This document shows, piece after piece, positions 55,867 to 64,000 of a stretch of DNA of 64,000 nt (positions are counted from its first letter, which is position 1; each line of letters starts with the position of its first letter). The stretch is taken from positions 1 through 64,000 of the IMG/VR virus record IMGVR_UViG_3300032236_001859; one strand, given 5' to 3'. The notes under the pieces are model-generated. The model saw only the letters and a list, made by a program, of their open reading frames with translations, made no database searches and was not told where the DNA came from. The position numbers and the translations under genes are program-made.

Positions 55867-56337
55867 TCAATAGTAGGGACAGATGAACTCGATTTCTCGT
55901 GGGGTCACCAGATTGACATCTACGGCTAGGGGCCACTCCACCCAGGCCTTGATGAGCCAGGAGTTACATGTCAGGTAACCCCTCCAGTCAACTCGCTTCA
56001 ACTTGAGACGGTACTGGGAACGCCCAAACGGACCCGCCTGTGGGGTCTGAGTATATGTCGAGAGATATCGGGCGACCACCGCTGGTGTTGGTTTCACGAA
56101 GCGGGTCCACTCGAATCGCTCGGGGACCTCGACATCCCAGATAAACCCCGTGAGAGTGGCGACAACACGTGGGATATTGCCATCCCGACGTTCGACATAA
56201 TCGGGGTGGGCTTTCTTCCAGAGGGCGACATCCATCTGGGCTTTGGGGAGCGAGTGCCGCGGGGGTCTCATGCGAAGAACCCGCTGACCCTCGGTGATAA
56301 CACAGCAAAACGATGGCGCAGGTGTGCAGAGTTTCAT
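55867..56337 (-). CDS. hypothetical protein (156 aa)
   Basis: AGGAG RBS. Confidence 0.7.
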   Translation of the reverse strand: MKLCTPAPSFCCVITEGQRVLRMRPPRHSLPKAQMDVALWKKAHPDYVERRDGNIPRVVATLTGFIWDVEVPERFEWTRFVKPTPAVVARYLSTYTQTPQAGPFGRSQYRLKLKRVDWRGYLTCNSWLIKAWVEWPLAVDVNLVTPREIEFICPYY

Positions 56338-56636
56338 GGGATCTCCTGGGGCCTACTGTAGGGCTTCTTGACTTCATCTGGGCATTTCCCGCATTGCAGG
56401 CAACACCCCGTGGTGAGTGAGCGGAGATGACAGTGCGAACAGACCCCGTGATCACTGACACGTTTTAGGGCCTCCTTGGGCTTCACCCCGGGGCGAAGCT
56501 GGTAGACCCACTTGAGTGGGTCGAAGACAAAGAACTCGGCGAGAGCAGCGGCGCGTAGCTTCTTGAGAACCGCAGAAGACGGCTTCCCTGTACGCGAGTG
56601 CTTCAAGGCCTCGGCGTAGCAAAGCGGCAGTCTCAT
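56334..56636 (-). CDS. basic Zn-finger protein, tandem paralog A
   Basis: GKPS...LR...EFF...DHGVCSHC...CLQCG..PD.VK.PY. Confidence 0.8.
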   Translation of the reverse strand: MRLPLCYAEALKHSRTGKPSSAVLKKLRAAALAEFFVFDPLKWVYQLRPGVKPKEALKRVSDHGVCSHCHLRSLTTGCCLQCGKCPDEVKKPYSRPQEIP

Positions 56637-56980
56637 TTCTTCGCCTTCGCCTTTGGTTTGTATGGGGACTTAACCTTGTCGGGGTCGGCACCACACATAC
56701 AGCATGTCCCCGCTGTGATGGCCCGGTGCAGGCAGGCAGGGCAGACCCCGTGATCCGGCCAGTACCGCAGGGCTTCACTGGGGTCGACACCATCACGAAG
56801 TCGGAAAACCATGGCGCCAACGCTGTGGCCGAAAACAACAGATTCTTTGGCGTATTCAAAGAACTCGGAGAAGACCGCACGACGCAGTCTCCGGATCGCA
56901 TGACCCGAGGGTTTGCCACGCTTGGAGCGTCTCAGCGCGATGAGGTAACAAGGTGTACCATCGGGAAAACGTGTTTTCAT
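56633..56980 (-). CDS. basic Zn-finger protein, tandem paralog B
   Basis: GKPS...LR...EFF...DHGVCPAC...CCMCG..PD.VK.PY; AAGGAGG RBS before ATG 56980. Confidence 0.8.
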   Translation of the reverse strand: MKTRFPDGTPCYLIALRRSKRGKPSGHAIRRLRRAVFSEFFEYAKESVVFGHSVGAMVFRLRDGVDPSEALRYWPDHGVCPACLHRAITAGTCCMCGADPDKVKSPYKPKAKAKK

Positions 56981-56990
56981 AGAGCCTCCT

Positions 56991-57269
56991 TTAACGAAGG
57001 GATAATGATTGTGGCCCCGGGCGGACCCCCGCGGGTTTCCCGCGACTCCGGAGTTCCCGGACGCCCTCGGCGAACTCAGGGGTGTTCCGGGGATCCTTAC
57101 AGCCCCGGTAGAGTGCCGCGCGGCCCCCGGGTGGGTAGAATCCAACATCGGGGTACTGACGGGTATCCGGGGTGGCCCGAATGATCTTGTTGTTGTGGCG
57201 ATACACCCGGGTGCCATCGGGCTCAACCCCGACCAAGACCTTGGTGCTGTTGCGATGAAAGGGTCTCAT
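56991..57269 (-). CDS. hypothetical protein
   Basis: AAGGAG RBS and ATGA overlap at 57269. Confidence 0.65.
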   Translation of the reverse strand: MRPFHRNSTKVLVGVEPDGTRVYRHNNKIIRATPDTRQYPDVGFYPPGGRAALYRGCKDPRNTPEFAEGVRELRSRGKPAGVRPGPQSLSLR

Positions 57270-57601
57270 TTTGTTGCTCCTTTGAGCATGGCGTAGAACT
57301 GCCGAATCTTCAGGGCCCCCGTTGGCGACATGCGACCATCTGGTTTCACCTCGTAGAGGAGCCCGTAACCCTTGGAGTACCCCACTAGAACAGAATAAGG
57401 CTCTCCATCCCTGAAACCGGGGGACCTCACAGTGGCCGTTGGTTTTCGGTAGATGAAGAGGACGCCCTCGGGATCCCGCCACAGCGCGAAGGATCTCAGG
57501 GTATCGCCGGCATGCGCCATGTTCTGCCGACTGAAAAAGCGACCCCCAGCGGCGATGTTGGCGGCGCGGACCTCACTTACTGTTTTGAACACGGCCCCCA
57601 T
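57266..57601 (-). CDS. hypothetical phage protein (111 aa)
   Basis: VRAANIAAGGRFFSR; stop/start abut neighbours. Confidence 0.7.
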   Translation of the reverse strand: MGAVFKTVSEVRAANIAAGGRFFSRQNMAHAGDTLRSFALWRDPEGVLFIYRKPTATVRSPGFRDGEPYSVLVGYSKGYGLLYEVKPDGRMSPTGALKIRQFYAMLKGATK

Positions 57602-58071
57602 TACGCACCCCCTTTCGGTAAAGGTTTCTGGACAGCCCCCTCAGGCATGTAACCGTACCGCGCCGCCTTCTCCTGACCCCAGGGATCCAGGGAATCCCAG
57701 ACCTTGAGGCGTTTCTTCAGAGAGGTCCGCAGCACGGGGTGATCCGCCCAACGCTTGGTATCCGCAAGCCAGGAGATCATCTTCTGGCGATGACTCTCCG
57801 CTTTGGTGAACCGGGTGTGGCGCTCGATGTCCGCTGGGGTCAGGAGATCCAGGGCCTCCATGCACTTGAAAAGTTCGGGGATCCAGTCCTCGCAGCCATC
57901 ACAGTACACCCACACCGATAGTGCGCGGACGTTGGTGTAGACCCGGCCGGACTTCGAGAGCGCGACTACAACATCGCCGACACGGGCGATGCGGGCCTGG
58001 ATCGGGGTGCGCGGGAACCTGAAGAACTGAGTCTTCTTGATGGCTTCAACAGGTGAACTGATTTTTCCCAT
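57601..58071 (-). CDS. hypothetical protein (156 aa)
   Basis: AAGGA RBS; CxxC. Confidence 0.7.
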   Translation of the reverse strand: MGKISSPVEAIKKTQFFRFPRTPIQARIARVGDVVVALSKSGRVYTNVRALSVWVYCDGCEDWIPELFKCMEALDLLTPADIERHTRFTKAESHRQKMISWLADTKRWADHPVLRTSLKKRLKVWDSLDPWGQEKAARYGYMPEGAVQKPLPKGGA

Positions 58072-58118
58072 GACGTTAATCCTTCTGGGTTAAGTAGGTT
58101 TATTTGGACTATAAACTA

Positions 58119-58152
58119 GATGAGGTGAATACCACGCGGTATCCACCTCATC
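58119..58152 (-). terminator. terminator-like hairpin after the ankyrin gene
   Basis: 15-bp stem whose single mismatch is a G-U pair on the minus strand; AT-rich TAGTTTATAG follows. Confidence 0.65.
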
Positions 58153-58173
58153 GGAGCCCCTGAAAACGGGAAA

Positions 58174-58863
58174 TCACTTTTTCTGAGACGCCTTCTTGTA
58201 CTTCTCCGTGAAGGCCTCTGACTTCAACTCGGTGCCTGTCTTGGCGCCTTTGCTGCGCAGGAACTTGACGATGCCAGAGGGATCCGTGTCGTCTTCCTTG
58301 CAGCACTTATGGAAGTTACTCTCACCCCGCATCGCGAAGTCGAGTGCGGTGGCCCCTACGCGATCCACCTGATTGATGACTGCACCTTTCTCGACCATGT
58401 GCTTGATCATGTCGAGTTGGTAGGGGCGACCAGCGGCCTGCATGAAAGGGGTGACCCCAAATGAGTCCGCTGTCTTCCAGCCCACGGGGTCTATGGCCTC
58501 GCACGCCTTGAAGACGGACACGTGTGCGTACTGGGCTACATGCAGCCACCCATTACAAGCCCACTTCCCCGCATATCTGGGATCCGGAGTCGGCACGCTC
58601 TCCCGGACATCCAAAATGGGCACCGTCGCCGAGAGCGCCTTGGGGTCCGTGGCCAAGAGATCCAGTAAGGCTTGGGCGTCTCGGTTGTAGATACACAGCA
58701 TCGCTGGGGAAACATCCACCCAGGTTCGTGGGCGTTCCGCGAAATACTGCTCGCGAGTTTTTGATGGGCGATAGACATCCTGGGGCTTCCATTCATAGGA
58801 GTAGGTCGCCGCGTTGACCCCTAGCCCGAGGAGGGCGAGGAAAACAAGAATTGATTTAATCAT
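58174..58863 (-). CDS. secreted ankyrin-repeat protein
   Basis: Signal peptide MIKSILVFLALLGLGVNA; DSFGVTPFMQAA...MVEKGAVINQVDRVGATALDFA; IVKFLRSKGA. Confidence 0.85.
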   Translation of the reverse strand: MIKSILVFLALLGLGVNAATYSYEWKPQDVYRPSKTREQYFAERPRTWVDVSPAMLCIYNRDAQALLDLLATDPKALSATVPILDVRESVPTPDPRYAGKWACNGWLHVAQYAHVSVFKACEAIDPVGWKTADSFGVTPFMQAAGRPYQLDMIKHMVEKGAVINQVDRVGATALDFAMRGESNFHKCCKEDDTDPSGIVKFLRSKGAKTGTELKSEAFTEKYKKASQKK

Positions 58864-58891
58864 GGCTGATCCTTTCAGGATTCAGGGTTTA

Positions 58892-59767
58892 TTAGGACGG
58901 GGTTTCTTCATAAGGCAAGGCATCGGCGCCACCATGGCCATTCTTGCACGTGAAGCCCGAGGGAGTCCAGAACTGGGGTTCCCGACACTGGCAACACAGG
59001 GCAAGACGGATTTGAGAACGGTCACTTACTGGAATCGCGTATCCATAGTCATCGAGAACCTCTGCCTTCGCGGAAACACGAGAGCGTTCGTCTTGATCAC
59101 AATGAAAGAATCTCATCGCGGGGGCAGCACCATGTGCAACCGCATAACAAAGTCTTCCAAGCATGGGACTGGGTCTCACCGCGTAGACCCGGGACAACAA
59201 GGGCACCCCGTAGATCTCACCAACACTGGGGGGTGCCACGGGGGTGCAGACGCGTTGGGCACCCCTGGTGACGACGACACCCCATTCGATGTGGCTGGCA
59301 AGACTACGGAGCAGGGAGTTCACGGCTTCAGTAAGTGAGACAGCGGCGCCACCAAATAATGCGTGGCTCCGCGACATCGGATCGTTTACCTTGTTGTCCA
59401 CCGTGAGCTGCCATTGATTACCTCGGGTGTCATAGGTGATCTCGACACGGCAGTCACCTTCGATGCCTGAGACCGCCTCCATGATCCGGTCGATCTCGGA
59501 GTCACCATAGGGCACCCCCAAAACAGGGGCCTGGGACCTCGCCATTTTCGATTCTAGCTCGTTTGAGGCCTCGGAGAGGGAATCCCCCCACTTCAGGAAA
59601 TCGACGTCGGGGACGCCTAGGATCGCGGCGGCGAGGGCTTCGAGGGTGATCAGGGAGTCGACTTGCAGCCGCGCCGGAGCTGCGGCGAGATCGAGGACAC
59701 TCCGGGGGAGATGAAACGTGGTCCCATTGGGGAGTCTGAAGTAAGCGAAACGAGAGTCTTCGTTCAT
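58892..59767 (-). CDS. hypothetical protein with C-terminal Zn-ribbon-like motif
   Basis: CCQCREPQ...TCKNGH; ATGA overlap. Confidence 0.75.
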   Translation of the reverse strand: MNEDSRFAYFRLPNGTTFHLPRSVLDLAAAPARLQVDSLITLEALAAAILGVPDVDFLKWGDSLSEASNELESKMARSQAPVLGVPYGDSEIDRIMEAVSGIEGDCRVEITYDTRGNQWQLTVDNKVNDPMSRSHALFGGAAVSLTEAVNSLLRSLASHIEWGVVVTRGAQRVCTPVAPPSVGEIYGVPLLSRVYAVRPSPMLGRLCYAVAHGAAPAMRFFHCDQDERSRVSAKAEVLDDYGYAIPVSDRSQIRLALCCQCREPQFWTPSGFTCKNGHGGADALPYEETPS

Positions 59768-60084
59768 CGGGGGACCTCGGCTTCACAGCGTACGGGGGTG
59801 GATGCACTGGGGGAGACCTGAACAAACCCGTATTGGAAGGCTCGCAACCATTCCTGGCCGGTCTTGGTGTCCCGTAGGAGATACACTGGGTTGGGGTAAC
59901 TGAAGCCTGATGGGGTCACCTGTGTTTCTACGAAACGAGTGTACTCCACGGGAACCGGGGCCTCTTTAGATTTTGGTTTTGATGACGCTGCCCCGTGTAT
60001 CGCCGTGATAAGCAGCACACCAAGAACAGCGGCAATCGCAATTAAGATCAAGATCTCGATAAGGGTGAATGCGGATGATTTCAT
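59764..60084 (-). CDS. prepilin-type N-terminal cleavage/methylation domain protein
   Basis: MKSSA|FTLIEILILIAIAAVLGVLL with conserved F1 and E5; AGGAGG RBS; ATGA overlap with sbcD stop. Confidence 0.8.
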   Translation of the reverse strand: MKSSAFTLIEILILIAIAAVLGVLLITAIHGAASSKPKSKEAPVPVEYTRFVETQVTPSGFSYPNPVYLLRDTKTGQEWLRAFQYGFVQVSPSASTPVRCEAEVPR

Positions 60085-61211
60085 TGGACCTCCTGGAGGA
60101 AGCGTTGGCGTGCGGATTCAATCTTGGCGACGATGCCTTCCTTGCCTTGGGTGCCATCGAGGAGATCGAGGGCGAGACCATGGGCGCGGGGGTCATCTTC
60201 GGGCTTCAAGAATCCAGACACGAAGGTGGTGATCTCGGGGACGCCTTCGGCGGCCACACTGGGATCAAAGGTGATCGCGGCCTTCTGGGATCCCGTGAAC
60301 TTGGGGACCACGAAGACATCTGACTTCGCGGCCTTGATGGTGTCCGCGAGGATCTCCGGCGCCGAGACAATTGAGTTGTCATAGGTGACGTAGATGACAC
60401 CAGGCAGCTTGGTCTCTTCTTGGTTGGCATCGGCGTGGGCAATGAACTCCCGAATCGAGGTCATCAGACCTTCGATGTTATCTGCGGTCACCGCGAACTG
60501 GCAGATCGAACGGGAGCGAATCGGGGCGCGTTCAAAGACGCCACCGGGATGCCGGAGCAACACAGACTTGGGATGCCTGGCCTCATTGATAGACCTCGTG
60601 GTCATCGCACCGGTGTAACCAGCCCAGCGAGTCCCGGATCGTGGACCTCCCCAGGGCTCATGAATATCGGACATCACGATGTCGCCGGCTAACTCGGGTA
60701 CCCAGTCGAGATCCAGGCTCCAACAACCCTCGATATCCAGGTACTGCTTACACGCCTGGTGCATGACGATGACATCGCTGGGGACCCCATTGGAACCCAC
60801 CTCGGCGAGCTTGGCGGCGAGGTCATCTCGTGAGGTGTAATCGAAGGCGCGTACTGCGGTACCCGCGATCTCTCTGAGATGACCATCACCGATCCAGTGG
60901 GCATCACCGGAGACCGCTTGGCCCCAGGACAACACCCGCTTGTCATGATTACCCTGGATGAAGGAGACAGAGGTGCCCTGTTCACTGGCACGCTCCACGA
61001 AGTCTCTGAACTTGTAGACCAAGGCGGGATGAGGATCCGGAGAATCAAAGATATCACCGGGTAGTATGAGGTCCCGGATATCCCGAGACTTGCATACCTT
61101 TAGGATCTCGGAGAGTCCGAGATCACTGTCACCTGTGATCTCTCTTCGAGACTCCCAGATCGTGAACGAGAGGTGTAAATCGCCAATAAAAGCGATGGTA
61201 GAAGGCTTCAT
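60081..61211 (-). CDS. sbcD: SbcD/Mre11-like metallophosphoesterase nuclease
   Basis: GDLHL, PGDIFD, QGNHD, MHQ, SDIH, YTGA; AAGGAG RBS. Confidence 0.9.
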   Translation of the reverse strand: MKPSTIAFIGDLHLSFTIWESRREITGDSDLGLSEILKVCKSRDIRDLILPGDIFDSPDPHPALVYKFRDFVERASEQGTSVSFIQGNHDKRVLSWGQAVSGDAHWIGDGHLREIAGTAVRAFDYTSRDDLAAKLAEVGSNGVPSDVIVMHQACKQYLDIEGCWSLDLDWVPELAGDIVMSDIHEPWGGPRSGTRWAGYTGAMTTRSINEARHPKSVLLRHPGGVFERAPIRSRSICQFAVTADNIEGLMTSIREFIAHADANQEETKLPGVIYVTYDNSIVSAPEILADTIKAAKSDVFVVPKFTGSQKAAITFDPSVAAEGVPEITTFVSGFLKPEDDPRAHGLALDLLDGTQGKEGIVAKIESARQRFLQEVQ

Positions 61212-61243
61212 TATGGAACTCCTTGTCTAGTAGATGGTTAAAC

Positions 61244-61486
61244 TGAAAAGCATCACATATGGTCCTTTAATATATCTAACTTCCAACAGCCAACAGCCCA
61301 CCAACCGTGGCGCCGACACCACCGGAGGTGGCGATGGTGACGACCAAGATCAGTGAAATTCACACGTCGAGGATTTCGACATCACGGCCTCCACCGGTGG
61401 TGGCGCCACGCGCAGCGGGCGCGGATGTCTGGCTGTTGGCTATCTGGAGGTTAGATATATTAAAGGACCGTATGTGATGCTTTTCA
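61244..61486. repeat. 243-bp compound inverted repeat
   Basis: Outer arms ~55 bp (TGAAAAGCATCACATA[T/C]GGTCCTTTAATATATCTAAC...AGCCAACAGCC) with few differences; inner degenerate arms CGTGGCGCC..ACCACCGG; two small hairpins in the centre. Confidence 0.9.
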
Positions 61487-61510
61487 AGTCTTGAGAACAT
61501 TTTGTTCACC

Positions 61511-62422
61511 TTAGTGAACAACTGGGGCCTCAGGAGATTTGACCCCTCCGGTGTCTAAGATTTCAACACTTTGGGATTTCTTCTCCTTCATCGAGAGCGC
61601 GTAGAACTGCTTCCCTAGATGTACTTTTTTAGGGATTACTGGGAGAGCGGCGTGGTGCATGAAGTCACTGATTACCTTCACCGGGGACATCACATGCTCC
61701 CTCCACTCCGTTAGCATCTCGGCATCCTTACAGGGGGTATCGAAGATAAAGCCGTAGTTCCCGATTGGAGTCGGGACTACCCCGGACTCCGAACACATCA
61801 CTGGGATCGACTTGTATCTACCCCCTCCAGAATCAGAGAAGATACCACGGTACCTGAACCCAAGGTTGGTGAGTTCATCGTAGGTCACAGGAGCCGAGTA
61901 GCCCTCCTCCAATTGGGTGATCTCCAGTGACCACACCAAAGGGGTGAGGCTACGGACATAGCGCGCCCGGAATGCCTCCCAGGCCTTATCGGCATCCCTG
62001 GAGTCAAACTCGCGCAATGGAAACGTGCTGGACTCCCGGTAGATCCACCGCGGAGGCGCCGGGGTCTTGGTGAGGGTGTCACGGATGACGAGTTCCCTTT
62101 TGAGCCAGCACGACGGACACAGGGGGTGGCGACAGTACCCTTCGGTGTCGGCATCATGGATGATGTGGATACCTCTACAATGCTTTTTGGTGACGTCGCC
62201 GAAGGCACGGGCATTGAAGGCTTGCTGCATGGCGCAGAACCCGCGTAGGAACTCACGGGTGAGGTTTTCGTGGTGGTTACCAATCATGTCCACGGCGAGG
62301 TCATAATAAACCCCTAGAGGATCCTCTAGGGGTAGACAGTCATTCTCGGGGTTGTTCTTCTCGGAGCTCCGCTCACCCTTTTGGTGCTTGCGGGCCCCCC
62401 AGGTTGGTGGTGGCGGTTTCAT
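61511..62422 (-). CDS. Rep_1 (rolling-circle initiator)-like protein, apparently lacking HUH histidines; start uncertain (62422 or 62551)
   Basis: YCRHPLCPSCWLKR resembles the Rep_1 Zn motif; WEAF...SLEIT followed by GFRYRGIF where H-x-H is expected. Confidence 0.5.
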   Translation of the reverse strand: MKPPPPTWGARKHQKGERSSEKNNPENDCLPLEDPLGVYYDLAVDMIGNHHENLTREFLRGFCAMQQAFNARAFGDVTKKHCRGIHIIHDADTEGYCRHPLCPSCWLKRELVIRDTLTKTPAPPRWIYRESSTFPLREFDSRDADKAWEAFRARYVRSLTPLVWSLEITQLEEGYSAPVTYDELTNLGFRYRGIFSDSGGGRYKSIPVMCSESGVVPTPIGNYGFIFDTPCKDAEMLTEWREHVMSPVKVISDFMHHAALPVIPKKVHLGKQFYALSMKEKKSQSVEILDTGGVKSPEAPVVH

Positions 62423-62631
62423 CGAGCCGTCCTTTGGGGTCCAGGCGACAGACCATGTTTGGGGTCCGGATGCGATCCGTGGACGCCACAGTGGGATCTG
62501 AGAGCGGGGACCGATATCTCGGGGTGGGATAGGCGCGGTGGAGTACCGCACGAGGACTCTGTGATAAGTACATGGAAACAGTCTACAGCGTTGAGACTTT
62601 TGGGCCAGCTATGAAGTTTTCGTAGCACTGC

Positions 62632-63126
62632 CTATGCGGAGATGAAAAGGCCTGTGCGACGATGAAAAGTACCCCCTTTGGCTAGATGAGCCTTAATGCT
62701 GCGGCGAGTCATCGTCTCCTGTGCAAGAGACCACAGACCTCTATCTGGGTGGTAAACAAAGGCAACGCCTGCTTGGATATCCCTCCAGATCTCCTCGACA
62801 TCTGTGACGAGAATGTTGACCTCTGGTCTGGGGAGATCAGGGCGTGGAATCGCAGTGGGTTCGTTGATCCCATTTTTGCGATCGACAAGATGACCATTGG
62901 CATGCAGGCCTTCGGCGATTTCGCGTGCGCGCTCTTCGAGGACCTCGATGGCCACAGCGGTGAATGCAATTCGGAGCCCTGCGGCATTGGCGAGCTCCCC
63001 CAGCTTCTTGATGTAGGCCTCAAATGAGAAGCGTAATGCGTCGACGTCACAGCGGCGGTCGAGTTCGGCACGCAAGAGGTCCCCTGGGTACTTGGCGAGT
63101 TCATGCGGAATTGGTCTGTCAGACAT
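62632..63126 (-). CDS. hypothetical protein (164 aa)
   Basis: AAAGGAG RBS; AT-rich upstream. Confidence 0.75.
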   Translation of the reverse strand: MSDRPIPHELAKYPGDLLRAELDRRCDVDALRFSFEAYIKKLGELANAAGLRIAFTAVAIEVLEERAREIAEGLHANGHLVDRKNGINEPTAIPRPDLPRPEVNILVTDVEEIWRDIQAGVAFVYHPDRGLWSLAQETMTRRSIKAHLAKGGTFHRRTGLFISA

Positions 63127-63206
63127 GTGAGTCTCCTTTGAATAGAGTTTATAGAAAATCTGGGGTTGACTCGCCTAGTACGGCATAGGTGGGTCAACGG
63201 GGGCCA

Positions 63207-63341
63207 CTAACCCCTCCAGATGTGGCCACGGAAGCCAGTAAATGCCCAGCCGATGAATACCACGGCCAGGAAAATAAGGGCTAACTTGATTAGGATCTGT
63301 GCGAGTGCGACGAGCACGAGCACTTTGATGATAGTCGCCAT
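63207..63341 (-). CDS. small membrane protein (44 aa)
   Basis: MATIIKVLVLVALAQILIKLALIFLAVVFIGWAF; AAGGA upstream. Confidence 0.65.
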   Translation of the reverse strand: MATIIKVLVLVALAQILIKLALIFLAVVFIGWAFTGFRGHIWRG

Positions 63342-63403
63342 ACGAGGTCCTTGCGGTGCAGGGCACCCAGGAGGTGAGGGCTCTGGCATCACTGCCATGC
63401 CGG

Positions 63404-63418
63404 ATTACCATGAGTCAA
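63404..63418 (-). promoter_or_regulatory. variant of the conserved motif at the strand-divergence point
   Basis: ATTACCA-T-GAGTCAA; minus strand TTGACT points into the leftward gene block. Confidence 0.35.
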
Positions 63419-63420
63419 CC

Positions 63421-64000
63421 ATGGTAGAACTTGCATCCAAGGAAAACGTGAGTCTCGGGGGCGACGCCGCCCTACCGAGTTACAACGATGCCCTCGGACG
63501 TCTTAGCAAGGCAAGGCAAGCCAATCCTAATATGCCCTTGTCGGCTGCCTTGCCTCTGATTTTCAAATTGAAAGGGAAACCATACTCGATAGCGAATACC
63601 CATTTCCTGTTCGAGCACGAGTATGCCACCCACAACATCCCCCGCCGGCAAATCGATAAGGCGGGGCGTCAGCTCTCGAAGTCGACGAACAAGGCCGCTG
63701 GTGGGATCATCCGTGCGGCGAGTCACCCCTATTACAACATGCTCTCGGTGACCCCGCTGTTCGAGCAGATCCGAAAGTTCTCCAACAACTATGTCCGCCC
63801 ATTCCTCAAAGAGTCCATTGTACGTGCACGTCTAATGGATGAGAGCAGGGACCAACAGGTCCTGCAGCGCACTCTCGGTAACGGTAGCAATCTGTTCTAC
63901 AATTACGCAACAAACTCAGCGGATCGTATCCGGGGCACGTCCTGCGATGAGGTCGCTGTGGATGAGCTCCAGGACTTTGACATCGATGTTTTGCCAGTTA
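63421..64000 (+). CDS. terminase large subunit (GpA-like ATPase domain), partial
   Basis: Hand-translated, open to window end: KAGRQLSKST (Walker A region), VTPLFEQIRKFS, ADRIRGTSCDEVAVDELQD (Walker B). Confidence 0.85.
   Translation, partial: MVELASKENVSLGGDAALPSYNDALGRLSKARQANPNMPLSAALPLIFKLKGKPYSIANTHFLFEHEYATHNIPRRQIDKAGRQLSKSTNKAAGGIIRAASHPYYNMLSVTPLFEQIRKFSNNYVRPFLKESIVRARLMDESRDQQVLQRTLGNGSNLFYNYATNSADRIRGTSCDEVAVDELQDFDIDVLPV

What the first reader, a model, noticed from the sequence alone, without database searches (positions are those of the whole stretch)
59764..60084. Phage type IV pilin mimic translationally coupled to sbcD
Seen: class III leader A|FTLIE with hydrophobic helix and a short non-pilin C-terminal domain (VYLLRDTKTGQEWL); strong RBS and ATGA coupling. 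Established: prepilin peptidase processes such leaders, and many phages use pili as receptors. Inference: a decoy pilin that disrupts pilus or T2SS assembly for superinfection exclusion. The leader style recalls PVC-group (e.g. planctomycete) prepilin-like proteins, a weak host hint.
Basis: partly seen in the sequence, partly recalled or inferred. Interest (0 to 1): 0.6.

Follow-up and report, generated by a model that had tools for sequence, protein, structure and literature searches.

The report
Jumbo-phage prepilin-anchored small periplasmic protein
A 216-kb uncultivated phage encodes a real 106-residue membrane protein with a pilin-type signal-anchor, but its conserved working part is a small non-pilin beta domain that relatives carry on other anchors, so it is probably not a decoy pilin.

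Summary
Window 59764-60084 (-) is a real, purifying-selected gene for a 106-aa protein. It has a 5-residue leader (MKSSA), FTLIE, a hydrophobic helix of about 24 residues, a perfect AGGAGG ribosome-binding site and ATGA overlaps on both sides.

- The family is tiny: 11 sequences, from this jumbo-phage lineage and a few unclassified metagenome contigs.
- Its conserved core is the C-terminal domain of about 55 residues, RF..T...YLIRDTKTGQEWL..YGF.QVSP..RCEA. This is a four-strand beta-meander. It resembles a single propeller blade, not a pilin head.
- The N-terminal anchor is interchangeable. It is prepilin-type in 7 members, a plain hydrophobic anchor in 3 (one lineage had exactly the G-1...+11 block overwritten), and a lipoprotein signal in 1.
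- The link to sbcD is generic: about 30% of genes in this genome overlap by 4 bp, and relatives have other genes inserted there.
- The phage carries no pilus or T2SS machinery and no peptidase. The host is unknown.

Best reading: an exported, membrane-tethered effector aimed at the host envelope, possibly for superinfection exclusion, and optionally trimmed by the host prepilin peptidase. Phage pilin mimics are already published (P-FimU, 2026). This protein is a new variant of that kind, not a mimic of a pilin head.

The parts
59764..60084 (-). Gene for the 106-aa protein P0001 (stop codon included): prepilin-type signal-anchor, then linker, then a conserved beta domain.
60070..60084 (-). Leader MKSSA (residues 1-5), with Ala at -1 of the putative prepilin-peptidase site.
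   Evidence: A or G at -1 is accepted (PMC3244431). Homologues have G in 5 cases and A in 2.
59998..60069 (-). Residues 6-29, FTLIEILILIAIAAVLGVLLITAI: F+1, E+5 and the hydrophobic helix (alpha1-N-like membrane anchor).
   Evidence: N_methyl 16.0 bits, E 0.0088. AF2 predicts a helix at 5-32. Best 19-residue Kyte-Doolittle window 3.18.
59944..59997 (-). Residues 30-47, HGAASSKPKSKEAPVPVE: a Lys/Pro-rich variable linker, predicted disordered. It sits where a pilin would have alpha1-C.
   Evidence: pLDDT below 50 for residues 34-45. Indels and 35% mean identity. dN/dS 0.55-1.5 in four of five pairs.
59767..59943 (-). Residues 48-106: the conserved C-domain, a four-strand beta-meander (RF..T, VYLLRD, QEWLRA, YGFVQVS) with an invariant tail R-C-E-A-E-V-P-R and a lone Cys100.
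   Evidence: AF2 on the domain alone gives pLDDT 75.9. dN/dS 0.11-0.33 in five of six pairs.
60089..60094 (-). Shine-Dalgarno AGGAGG, 4 nt before the ATG. It lies inside the last codons of the upstream gene.
60081..61211 (-). Upstream gene, 376 aa: calcineurin-like metallophosphoesterase with weak SbcD/Mre11 likeness. Its TGA overlaps the target's ATG (ATGA at 60084-60081).
   Evidence: Pfam Metallophos 5.6e-8. TIGR00619 sbcd 26 bits, below the 77.65 cut-off. PHROG 1649 and 100.
58892..59767 (-). Downstream gene, 291 aa: no TM and no family match, with a conserved Cys/His-rich C-terminus. It is ATGA-coupled to the target (59767-59764). It is conserved downstream of the small gene in L001 and L004 (47-54% identity), directly in L001 and after an inserted 136-aa gene in L004.
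58174..58863 (-). Next gene, 229 aa: ankyrin-repeat protein with an N-terminal signal-peptide-like segment. It is probably in the same transcription unit. It is present in the window and L001 (a 233-aa ORF at the matching place in L004 was not compared) and absent in L003.
58119..58152 (-). Hairpin with a 15-bp stem after the ankyrin gene. It may mark the end of the unit. It has no U-tract.
61244..61486 (.). Conserved ~243-nt nested palindrome that fills the gap upstream of the SbcD-like gene. It is a candidate regulatory, origin or terminator element bounding the unit.

Best explanation
The gene encodes a small exported protein tethered to the membrane. Its working part is the conserved C-terminal beta domain of about 55 residues, held in the periplasm on a flexible linker of about 15 residues.

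In this phage the tether is a prepilin-type (class III) signal-anchor: leader MKSSA, then FTLIE and a hydrophobic helix. I infer that the protein inserts N-in/C-out through the Sec/SRP route. I also infer that the host prepilin peptidase may trim and N-methylate it. That could place it next to the host's type IV filament machinery (T4P or T2SS).

The function that selection maintains is binding by the C-domain to some host envelope component. This is the way small tethered phage proteins such as the T5 Llp lipoprotein and the Cor proteins, which act on a phage receptor, and T4 Imm, which blocks DNA entry, exclude superinfecting phage. It is not a structural copy of a host pilin, and its link to the SbcD-like gene is only tight gene packing.

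Shown: the gene is real, its architecture, the conservation pattern, the exchange of anchors among homologues, and the absence of pilus genes in the phage. Inferred: topology, processing, the binding target and the exclusion role.
For: Architecture. AF2 predicts a helix at 5-32, a disordered segment at 34-45 and four strands. The domain modelled alone gives pLDDT 75.9.

Conservation. The C-domain has 59% mean pairwise identity, against 29-35% for the rest of the TM segment and the linker. dN/dS is 0.11-0.33 for the C-domain in five of six pairs, against 0.55-1.5 for the linker in four of five pairs.

Anchor exchange.
- Seven members have a class III motif.
- In P0004 and P0005 exactly the G-1..A+11 block is replaced: 17 of ~31 nt differ there, against 0-4 differences per 30 nt in most other windows. 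The hydrophobic anchor is kept. The P0005 form occurs on at least four contigs from several samples.
- P0013 has a plain N-terminal hydrophobic segment and is a clear homologue (BLASTP 3e-17).
- P0017/P0018 carries a lipoprotein signal, MRTLLLMAITFCLVGC, in front of the same domain (hhalign 97%, E 1e-10). This variant also argues that the domain is exported.

Family range. The family is small, about 11 sequences. No relative was found in 185,579 species genomes or in GenBank phages. It is known only from virus records and large phage-like contigs with the same gene order (window, L001, L003, L004) and from short unclassified metagenome contigs. In L016 the domain sits among small genes that include an HTH_3 regulator.

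Dependence on the host. The genome has no peptidase A24, no T2SSE above cut-off, no T2SSF and no second N_methyl protein.

Precedent that phages place pilin-type proteins in host envelopes for exclusion: PMC12952977.
Against: - No experiment bears on this protein and the host is unknown.
- E+5 is retained in all 7 motif-bearing members. That is more than a mere anchor needs, and it suggests real engagement with filament assembly in those lineages.
- The charge bias does not favour N-in for the window protein: 1 Lys on the N-side against 3 Lys within 15 residues on the C-side. The topology is therefore not settled by sequence.
- The C-domain has no significant structural or family match: Z is 4.3 or lower, and DUF6440 and PQQ-blade likeness are weak. 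The binding role is an analogy, not a finding.
- The two most distant members (P0013, P0017) might have diverged in function.
Confidence: 0.5

Rival explanations
1. Decoy or modular mini-pilin. After cleavage by the host prepilin peptidase, the alpha1-N-like helix is taken up by the T4P or T2SS assembly platform. There the protein either poisons or caps filament growth, or rides on the filament with the phage beta domain displayed. Either way it blocks pilus-dependent superinfection.
For: - Class III motif with F+1 and E+5 in 7 of the 11 members. P0010 scores 37.8 bits on N_methyl.
- Ala or Gly at -1 is cleavable (PMC3244431).
- P-FimU, P-PilA and 60-residue truncated PilA proteins encoded by virulent phages are documented, and incorporation or assembly inhibition has been proposed for them (PMC12952977).
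- Atlas clusters of small viral N_methyl proteins and PHROG 13280 suggest a wider class.
Against: - Homologues without the motif, or with a lipoprotein signal, keep the C-domain.
- A Pro/Lys-rich disordered linker replaces alpha1-C.
- There is no pilin head and no D-region disulfide. No pilin appears among fold matches.
- The window protein is below the N_methyl cut-off.
- No similarity to any bacterial pilin was found beyond the first ~27 residues.
Confidence: 0.25
2. A genuine structural pilin subunit, major or minor, assembled into a phage-specified filament. This would parallel the SNJ2 provirus pilins or a FimU replacement.
For: - Helix followed by four beta strands is formally the secondary-structure order of pilins.
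- Viral pilins that hijack host machinery exist (PMC12426801, PMC12952977).
Against: - The mature protein is only about 101 residues, with a disordered linker after alpha1-N.
- No structural match to pilins.
- Single Cys.
- Motif-less and lipoprotein homologues exist.
- No accompanying pilin or assembly genes in the genome.
Confidence: 0.07
3. A lysis-related or other membrane protein unrelated to exclusion, such as a spanin-like, holin-regulating or envelope-remodelling factor. The prepilin-like anchor would be incidental.
For: - An N-terminal anchor plus a periplasmic domain is the i-spanin layout, and a lipoprotein-anchored homologue recalls o-spanins.
- Envelope-polysaccharide enzymes lie nearby in two relatives: PS_pyruv_trans in L001, and GT2 plus methyltransferases in L008.
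Against: - No coiled-coil periplasmic domain, no C-terminal TM, and no partner spanin, holin or endolysin adjacent.
- The gene sits among nucleic-acid-metabolism and small early-type genes.
Confidence: 0.13
4. Not a functional gene: a chance ORF with a chance motif.
For: The Pfam and TIGRFAM scores of the window protein are below their cut-offs.
Against: - Ten homologues, with dN/dS of 0.1-0.3 in the C-domain in most pairs.
- Perfect ribosome-binding site.
- Conserved position in four syntenic genomes or large contigs (window, L001, L003, L004).
Confidence: 0.01

Closest known systems
Phage-encoded type IV pilus components: P-FimU of F10-like Pseudomonas prophages, P-PilA of Xylella prophages, and 60-residue truncated PilA of virulent Pseudomonas phages (Sztanko et al., Cell Rep 2026, PMC12952977)
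   Same: All are encoded by phages and carry a prepilin-type N-terminus that depends on host machinery. All are candidates for exclusion of other phages. The truncated-PilA group is also very short and occurs in non-temperate phages.
   Different: Those proteins are recognisable homologues of host FimU or PilA, about 50% identical for P-PilA, with superimposable predicted folds. Here nothing beyond the ~25-residue anchor resembles any pilin. The conserved part is an unrelated beta domain, and homologues swap the anchor for a plain TM or a lipoprotein signal.
Type IV pilin / pseudopilin superfamily (Pfam N_methyl PF07963, TIGR02532; PilA, ComGC, GspG-K)
   Same: A short basic leader, A/G at -1, F+1, E+5 and a hydrophobic helix of about 20 residues. 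The best weak NCBIfam matches are ComGC and GspH, over the N-terminus only.
   Different: The protein scores below the family cut-offs. It lacks alpha1-C, a globular alpha-beta-roll head and a D-region disulfide. It does not sit in a pilus operon.
Small tethered phage exclusion proteins (T5 Llp lipoprotein, phi80/N15 Cor, T4 Imm and Sp). Named from general knowledge as a functional analogy only.
   Same: All are small phage proteins anchored at the envelope by a lipid or a single TM, with a compact exposed domain. Their genes lie outside the structural modules.
   Different: No sequence or fold similarity was tested or found. The analogy rests on layout and on the interchangeable TM and lipoprotein anchors within this family.
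Single blades of PQQ/BamB-type beta-propellers, and Pfam DUF6440 (PF20037, unknown function, partly viral)
   Same: The YLIRDTKTGQEWL hairpin aligns with the LALDTKTGKEKW hairpin of PQQ_2 blades: profile hits P0009 and P0011, and hhalign 80% over 22 columns. The best PDB neighbours of the domain model are single propeller blades, with rmsd 1.6-3 A over 36-47 residues. DUF6440 clusters are the top Atlas neighbours by features and by shape.
   Different: All of these signals are weak: Z below 4, DUF6440 E 0.13 for one member only, Atlas scores below 0.9. A lone blade is not a propeller, and a four-copy complex job gave no answer. Membership of either family is not established.

Membership tests
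Type IV pilin / prepilin-type proteins (class III signal peptide) | Short positively charged leader ending in Gly (Ala tolerated) at -1, within about 35 residues of the N-terminus. | tested here: met
   MKSS-A5 | F6. Homologues have G at -1 in 5 cases and A in 2. Cleavage at G or A is stated in PMC3244431.
Type IV pilin / prepilin-type proteins (class III signal peptide) | Hydrophobic +1 residue (F/M/L), Glu/Asp at +5, then about 20 uncharged residues and a single TM. | tested here: met
   F6, E10, and 14 of 14 following residues uncharged. Best 19-residue Kyte-Doolittle window 3.18.
Type IV pilin / prepilin-type proteins (class III signal peptide) | Score over the curated cut-off of PF07963 or TIGR02532. 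| tested here: not met
   PF07963 gives 16.0 bits against 21.2, and TIGR02532 gives 10.1 against 16.3. Homologues P0002, P0006 and P0010 pass PF07963.
Type IV pilin / prepilin-type proteins (class III signal peptide) | Motif conserved across the protein's own family. | tested here: not met
   The motif is present in 7 members. It is absent in P0004, P0005 and P0013 and replaced by a lipobox in P0017/P0018.
Type IV pilin / prepilin-type proteins (class III signal peptide) | Continuous alpha1 helix (N and C halves) packed on a globular head with a 4-5-strand antiparallel sheet; fold match to solved pilins. | tested here: not met
   The helix ends at residue ~32 and is followed by a disordered Pro/Lys linker. 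No pilin appears among the Foldseek or VIA matches. The PDB profile search matches pilins only over residues 1-45, at E 0.4 or weaker.
Type IV pilin / prepilin-type proteins (class III signal peptide) | C-terminal disulfide-bonded D-region (type IVa pilins). | tested here: not met
   Cys100 is the only Cys in the whole protein.
Type IV pilin / prepilin-type proteins (class III signal peptide) | Actual cleavage and N-methylation by a prepilin peptidase, and incorporation into a filament. | not testable with these tools
   The phage has no peptidase A24. The host is unknown.
Phage-encoded pilin mimics (P-FimU / P-PilA type) | Recognisable homology and fold identity with a host pilus subunit. | tested here: not met
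   No bacterial relative in 185,579 species genomes or among 1.84 billion cluster representatives. No pilin fold match.
SbcCD / Mre11-Rad50 module (functional linkage claimed through coupling) | Conserved adjacency or coupling of the small gene with the nuclease gene. | tested here: not met
   They are coupled in the window and in L003 only. L001 has 294-aa and 50-aa genes between them, L004 has a ~200-nt gap, and L011 has other neighbours. The 4-bp overlap is found in 62 of 204 crude genes.
Pfam DUF6440 (PF20037) | Score over the curated cut-off (26.5 bits). | tested here: not met
   Only P0013 matches, at 12.5 bits and E 0.13. The genome scan hits a different place. The Atlas feature and shape neighbours are suggestive only.
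PQQ/BamB-type beta-propeller repeat | Full-blade profile match, and several blades forming a propeller. | tested here: inconclusive
   Only the hairpin matches: 22 columns at 80% probability. There is one blade-sized unit per protein. The homo-oligomer job gave no answer.

The most novel reading that the evidence does not exclude
A phage-specific family of modular mini-pilins. A bare alpha1-N prepilin anchor lets the host's type IV filament machine (T4P or T2SS) extract a phage-made, single-blade-like beta domain from the inner membrane and display it on, or use it to plug, the filament. The lineage-specific overwriting of the motif (the P0005 clade) and the swaps to TM or lipoprotein anchors would then record host shifts between bacteria with and without a compatible prepilin pathway.
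Probability: 0.2. Interest if true: 0.65.

Novelty: new variant of a known kind. Interest (0 to 1): 0.4.

Why it matters
Phage proteins that enter the host's pilus pathway were shown only recently to mediate phage-versus-phage exclusion. All known cases are copies of host pilins.

This family would extend the idea to a minimal prepilin anchor that carries an unrelated small domain, in an uncultivated jumbo-phage lineage. It also offers a natural experiment. The same domain occurs behind a prepilin anchor, a plain TM and a lipoprotein anchor. That allows a direct test of what a class III signal adds beyond membrane tethering.

The practical value is modest until a host is known. The main value now is a corrected annotation: this is not a pilin and it is not linked to SbcD. 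The domain of about 55 residues is also a defined target for structure and binding studies.

Tried and rejected
- Fold searches. Foldseek of the full model against PDB gave no match with E of 0.001 or better. VIA-align wide searches of the full model and of the domain gave Z of 4.3 or lower, mostly single propeller blades, which is not significant.
- PDB sequence-profile search: only pilin N-termini, at E around 0.4.
- GenBank phages, tblastn with the small protein and with the SbcD-like protein: no match. The terminase is at most 25% identical to any cultured phage, so there is no host inference.
- Scan of 185,579 species genomes: no relative.
- Homo-oligomer prediction with four copies of residues 45-106: verdict 'no answer', score 0.04. 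This is not evidence either way.
No read-level or environment evidence was obtained, and read laying was not used.
- DUF6440 was chased in a Listeria phage record and in the window's own genome. Nothing relevant turned up.
- Rfam scan of 57000-64000: nothing.
- Sigma-70 promoter scan of 57400-63400: none found.
- A frameshift as the cause of the motif-less P0005 N-terminus was rejected. The DNA alignment shows a block of substitutions in the same frame.
- The downstream 291-aa protein as an obligate partner was rejected. It has no TM or signal. In L004, L011 and the P0008 contig a different 135-136-aa gene follows the small gene, and in L008 the following gene is a GT2 glycosyltransferase.
Full report
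**Setting.** The window is the first 64 kb of a 216,043-bp virus record with direct terminal repeats, estimated 100% complete. GC content is 57%. By a crude count, 185 of 204 genes lie on the minus strand. The large terminase starts at 63220 (+) and is at most ~25% identical to that of any cultured phage. This is therefore an uncultivated jumbo-phage lineage with no host assignment.

**The observation.**
- The ORF at 59764-60084 (-) encodes 106 residues: MKSSA | FTLIE ILILIAIAAVLGVLLITAI ..., and there is no alternative upstream start.
- The ATG overlaps the TGA of the upstream 376-aa gene (ATGA, 60084-60081).
- A perfect AGGAGG lies 4 nt upstream, at 60094-60089.
- The stop of the ORF overlaps the ATG of the downstream 291-aa gene in the same way (59767-59764).
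- The N-terminus meets the published PilFind-type rule: [GAS]-x4-[DE] near the N-terminus, followed by an uncharged stretch and a single TM. That source also states that PilD cleaves at Gly or Ala (PMC3244431; rule applied).
- On profiles the window protein is sub-threshold: PF07963 16.0 against 21.2 bits, and TIGR02532 10.1 against 16.3.
- It is the only such ORF in the 216-kb genome.

**The family.** The word search found six relatives at 52-85% identity. An exhaustive profile search with the C-terminal part against 1.84 billion cluster representatives added P0008, P0010 and P0013. A search from P0013 added P0017. Nothing was found in GenBank phages or in 185,579 species genomes. The family is small. 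It is known only from virus records or large phage-like contigs and from short unclassified metagenome contigs.

The alignment shows that the conserved part is the C-terminal region of about 55 residues: R50, F51, T54, then VYLLRD-TKTG-QEWL, YGF.QVSP, and a tail R-C-E-A-E-V-P/T-R. Conservation differs sharply along the protein.

| Region | Mean pairwise identity | dN/dS |
|---|---|---|
| C-domain | 59% | 0.11-0.33 in five of six pairs (0.79 in L004 vs L011) |
| TM segment beyond the motif | 29% | N-terminal 30 residues 0.19-0.78 in the four pairs with a value |
| Linker | 35%, with indels | 0.55-1.5 in four of five pairs (0.14 in L005 vs L001) |

**The anchor is interchangeable.**
- Seven members carry a class III motif: G or A at -1, F or L at +1, E at +5.
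- P0010 is a distant member with a canonical motif (N_methyl 37.8 bits). P0002 (22.0) and P0006 (21.5) also pass the cut-off.
- In the P0004/P0005 clade exactly the block from G-1 to A+11 is overwritten: GFTVIELVIAIC becomes ESVAFQCLVGIC.
  - In this block 17 of ~31 nt differ, against 0-4 differences per 30 nt in most other windows of the gene.
  - The frame is unchanged and the segment stays hydrophobic.
  - This form occurs on a 200-kb contig and at least three other contigs from different samples.
- P0013 has a plain N-terminal hydrophobic segment and is a clear homologue (BLASTP 3e-17).
- In L016 the same domain follows a textbook lipoprotein signal, MRTLLLMAITFCLVGC. hhalign to the domain profile gives 97%, E 1e-10.

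Whatever the family does, it therefore does not need prepilin processing or filament assembly. It needs an exported, tethered C-domain.

**Structure.**
- AF2 on the full protein gives mean pLDDT 62: a helix at 5-32, a disordered Lys/Pro linker at 34-45, and four strands.
- The domain alone, with 10 sequences, gives pLDDT 75.9 and the same four-strand meander.
- Foldseek and two exhaustive VIA-align searches find no pilin and nothing significant, with Z of 4.3 or lower. The top neighbours of the domain are single blades of Kelch, WD40, prolyl-oligopeptidase and RSL-lectin propellers, at rmsd 1.6-3 A over 36-47 residues.
- Consistently, the profile search pulled in multi-blade PQQ_2/BamB-type and Reg_prop proteins through their LALDTKTGKEKW hairpins. 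The profile-profile match covers only 22 columns at 80% probability.
- Pfam DUF6440, a partly viral family of unknown function, recurs as the nearest Atlas neighbour by features and by shape, and as a 12.5-bit hit of P0013. It never reaches its cut-off.
- The protein has no alpha1-C, no pilin head and only one Cys.

**Context.**
- The upstream gene is a calcineurin-like phosphoesterase with weak SbcD/Mre11 likeness.
- The 4-bp overlap with it is shared by the close relative L003. In L001 a polysaccharide-pyruvyl-transferase-like gene and a 50-aa gene lie between the two genes. In L004 there is a ~200-nt gap. L011 has other neighbours.
- In this genome 62 of 204 crude genes show the same overlap. 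Coupling to sbcD therefore reflects gene packing, not function.
- The downstream 291-aa protein is conserved in the close lineage (47-54% identity) but has no signal or TM. In three contexts (L004, L011 and the P0008 contig) a 135-136-aa gene follows the small gene instead.
- An ankyrin-repeat protein with a signal-peptide-like N-terminus follows in the window and in L001 (a 233-aa ORF sits at the matching place in L004). It is absent in L003.
- The phage encodes no peptidase A24, no T2SSF, no convincing T2SSE and no second N_methyl protein. Any processing or assembly would have to be done by the host.

**Interpretation.** My best reading, at confidence ~0.5, is an exported, membrane-tethered small effector. 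Its C-domain binds a host envelope component. In this phage it is anchored by a prepilin-type signal that the host peptidase may trim, and that may place it near the type IV filament machinery. A role in superinfection exclusion is plausible, by analogy with small tethered phage proteins. It is also plausible because phage proteins in the pilus pathway are now known to exclude other phages (PMC12952977; viral pilins that hijack host machinery also in PMC12426801). The exclusion role is still an inference.

The decoy or modular-pilin reading keeps ~0.25, because E+5 is retained wherever the motif exists. A true structural pilin is at ~0.07, a lysis-type or other membrane role at ~0.13, and a chance ORF at ~0.01.

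One caveat applies to all exported-domain models. The Lys/Arg distribution around the helix does not clearly favour N-in for the window protein: 1 on the N-side against 3 on the C-side. The lipoprotein homologue is the main argument that the domain is exported.

**What could not be done.**
There is therefore no read, expression or sample evidence, and read laying was not used.
- The four-copy complex job returned 'no answer'.
- The host, and with it the PVC hint, could not be tested.

**Novelty and score.** Phage-encoded pilin-type proteins are known. This one differs in being a bare prepilin anchor fused to an unrelated, family-specific beta domain, with natural anchor swaps. It is a new variant of a known kind, and its interest is moderate (0.4) until a host and a target are known.

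Noticed in passing
window 61244-61486 (also L003 4593-4835, L004 4399-4634, L001 3562-3804): A ~243-nt nested, near-perfect palindrome fills the gap between the 346-aa gene and the SbcD-like gene. Its outer arms are 42 nt and 95% complementary. It is unique in the 216-kb genome. Its place and its pairing are conserved in three relatives, with changes on both sides of the outer arms. As RNA it folds at -151 kcal/mol (z = -15). It has no Rfam match. A long palindrome directly beside a palindrome-nuclease-like gene is curious: it could be an origin or cruciform, an attenuator, or a structured RNA.
   Followed up: partly
L001 6001-6318 against L005 380-703: The prepilin motif block (codons 6-17) is the main hyper-diverged stretch between two otherwise close genes. 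There 17 of ~31 nt differ, against 0-4 differences per 30 nt in most other windows; one further window holds a 6-nt deletion. This looks like targeted replacement or patch recombination that erased G-1/F+1/E+5 while keeping a hydrophobic anchor.
   Followed up: yes
L016 3526-3750: A distant homologue of the C-domain sits behind a classical lipoprotein signal, MRTLLLMAITFCLVGC. The gene caller had started the protein at an internal Met. Its neighbours are small genes that include an HTH_3 regulator.
   Followed up: partly
window 58174-58863 (-): A 229-aa ankyrin-repeat protein has an N-terminal signal-peptide-like segment, MIKSILVFLALLGLGVNAAT, so it is probably exported. It is unusual cargo for a phage. 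It is present in the window and L001 (a 233-aa ORF lies at the matching place in L004) and missing in the close relative L003.
   Followed up: partly
window 58892-59767 (-): A 291-aa protein with no family match. Its Cys/His-rich C-terminus (LALCCQCREPQFWTPSGFTCKNGHGGADALPYEETPS) is almost invariant, even at 47% overall identity (L004). It could be a zinc-ribbon-like module.
   Followed up: partly
window 56334-56636 (-) and 56633-57226 (-): Two adjacent small ORFs look like paralogues. They share ...GKPS...LR...EFF...DHGVC..C......C..CG..PD.VK.PY, a possible zinc-binding tail. This was judged by eye from the ORF list only.
   Followed up: no
L001 4964-5848; L008 634-1275, 1505-2287 and 2502-3236: Envelope-polysaccharide-type enzymes sit next to the small gene in two unrelated contexts. 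L001 has a PS_pyruv_trans-like gene. L008 has a GT2 glycosyltransferase and two methyltransferases. This is a weak hint of a cell-surface theme.
   Followed up: no
L011 1208-1597 (P0007): This homologue has a duplicated N-terminus (GFTLRRTSGFTLIE and a repeated AILGVIG segment), which gives a 40-residue hydrophobic stretch. It could be an internal duplication or a mis-called start.
   Followed up: no
L001 10168-10581 (-): A Cas12f1-like_TNB (TnpB-type) gene fragment lies at the end of the 200-kb relative's contig.
   Followed up: no
window 58119-58152 (-): A hairpin with a 15-bp stem and no U-tract lies between the ankyrin gene and the next 156-aa gene. It may be a unit boundary.
   Followed up: no
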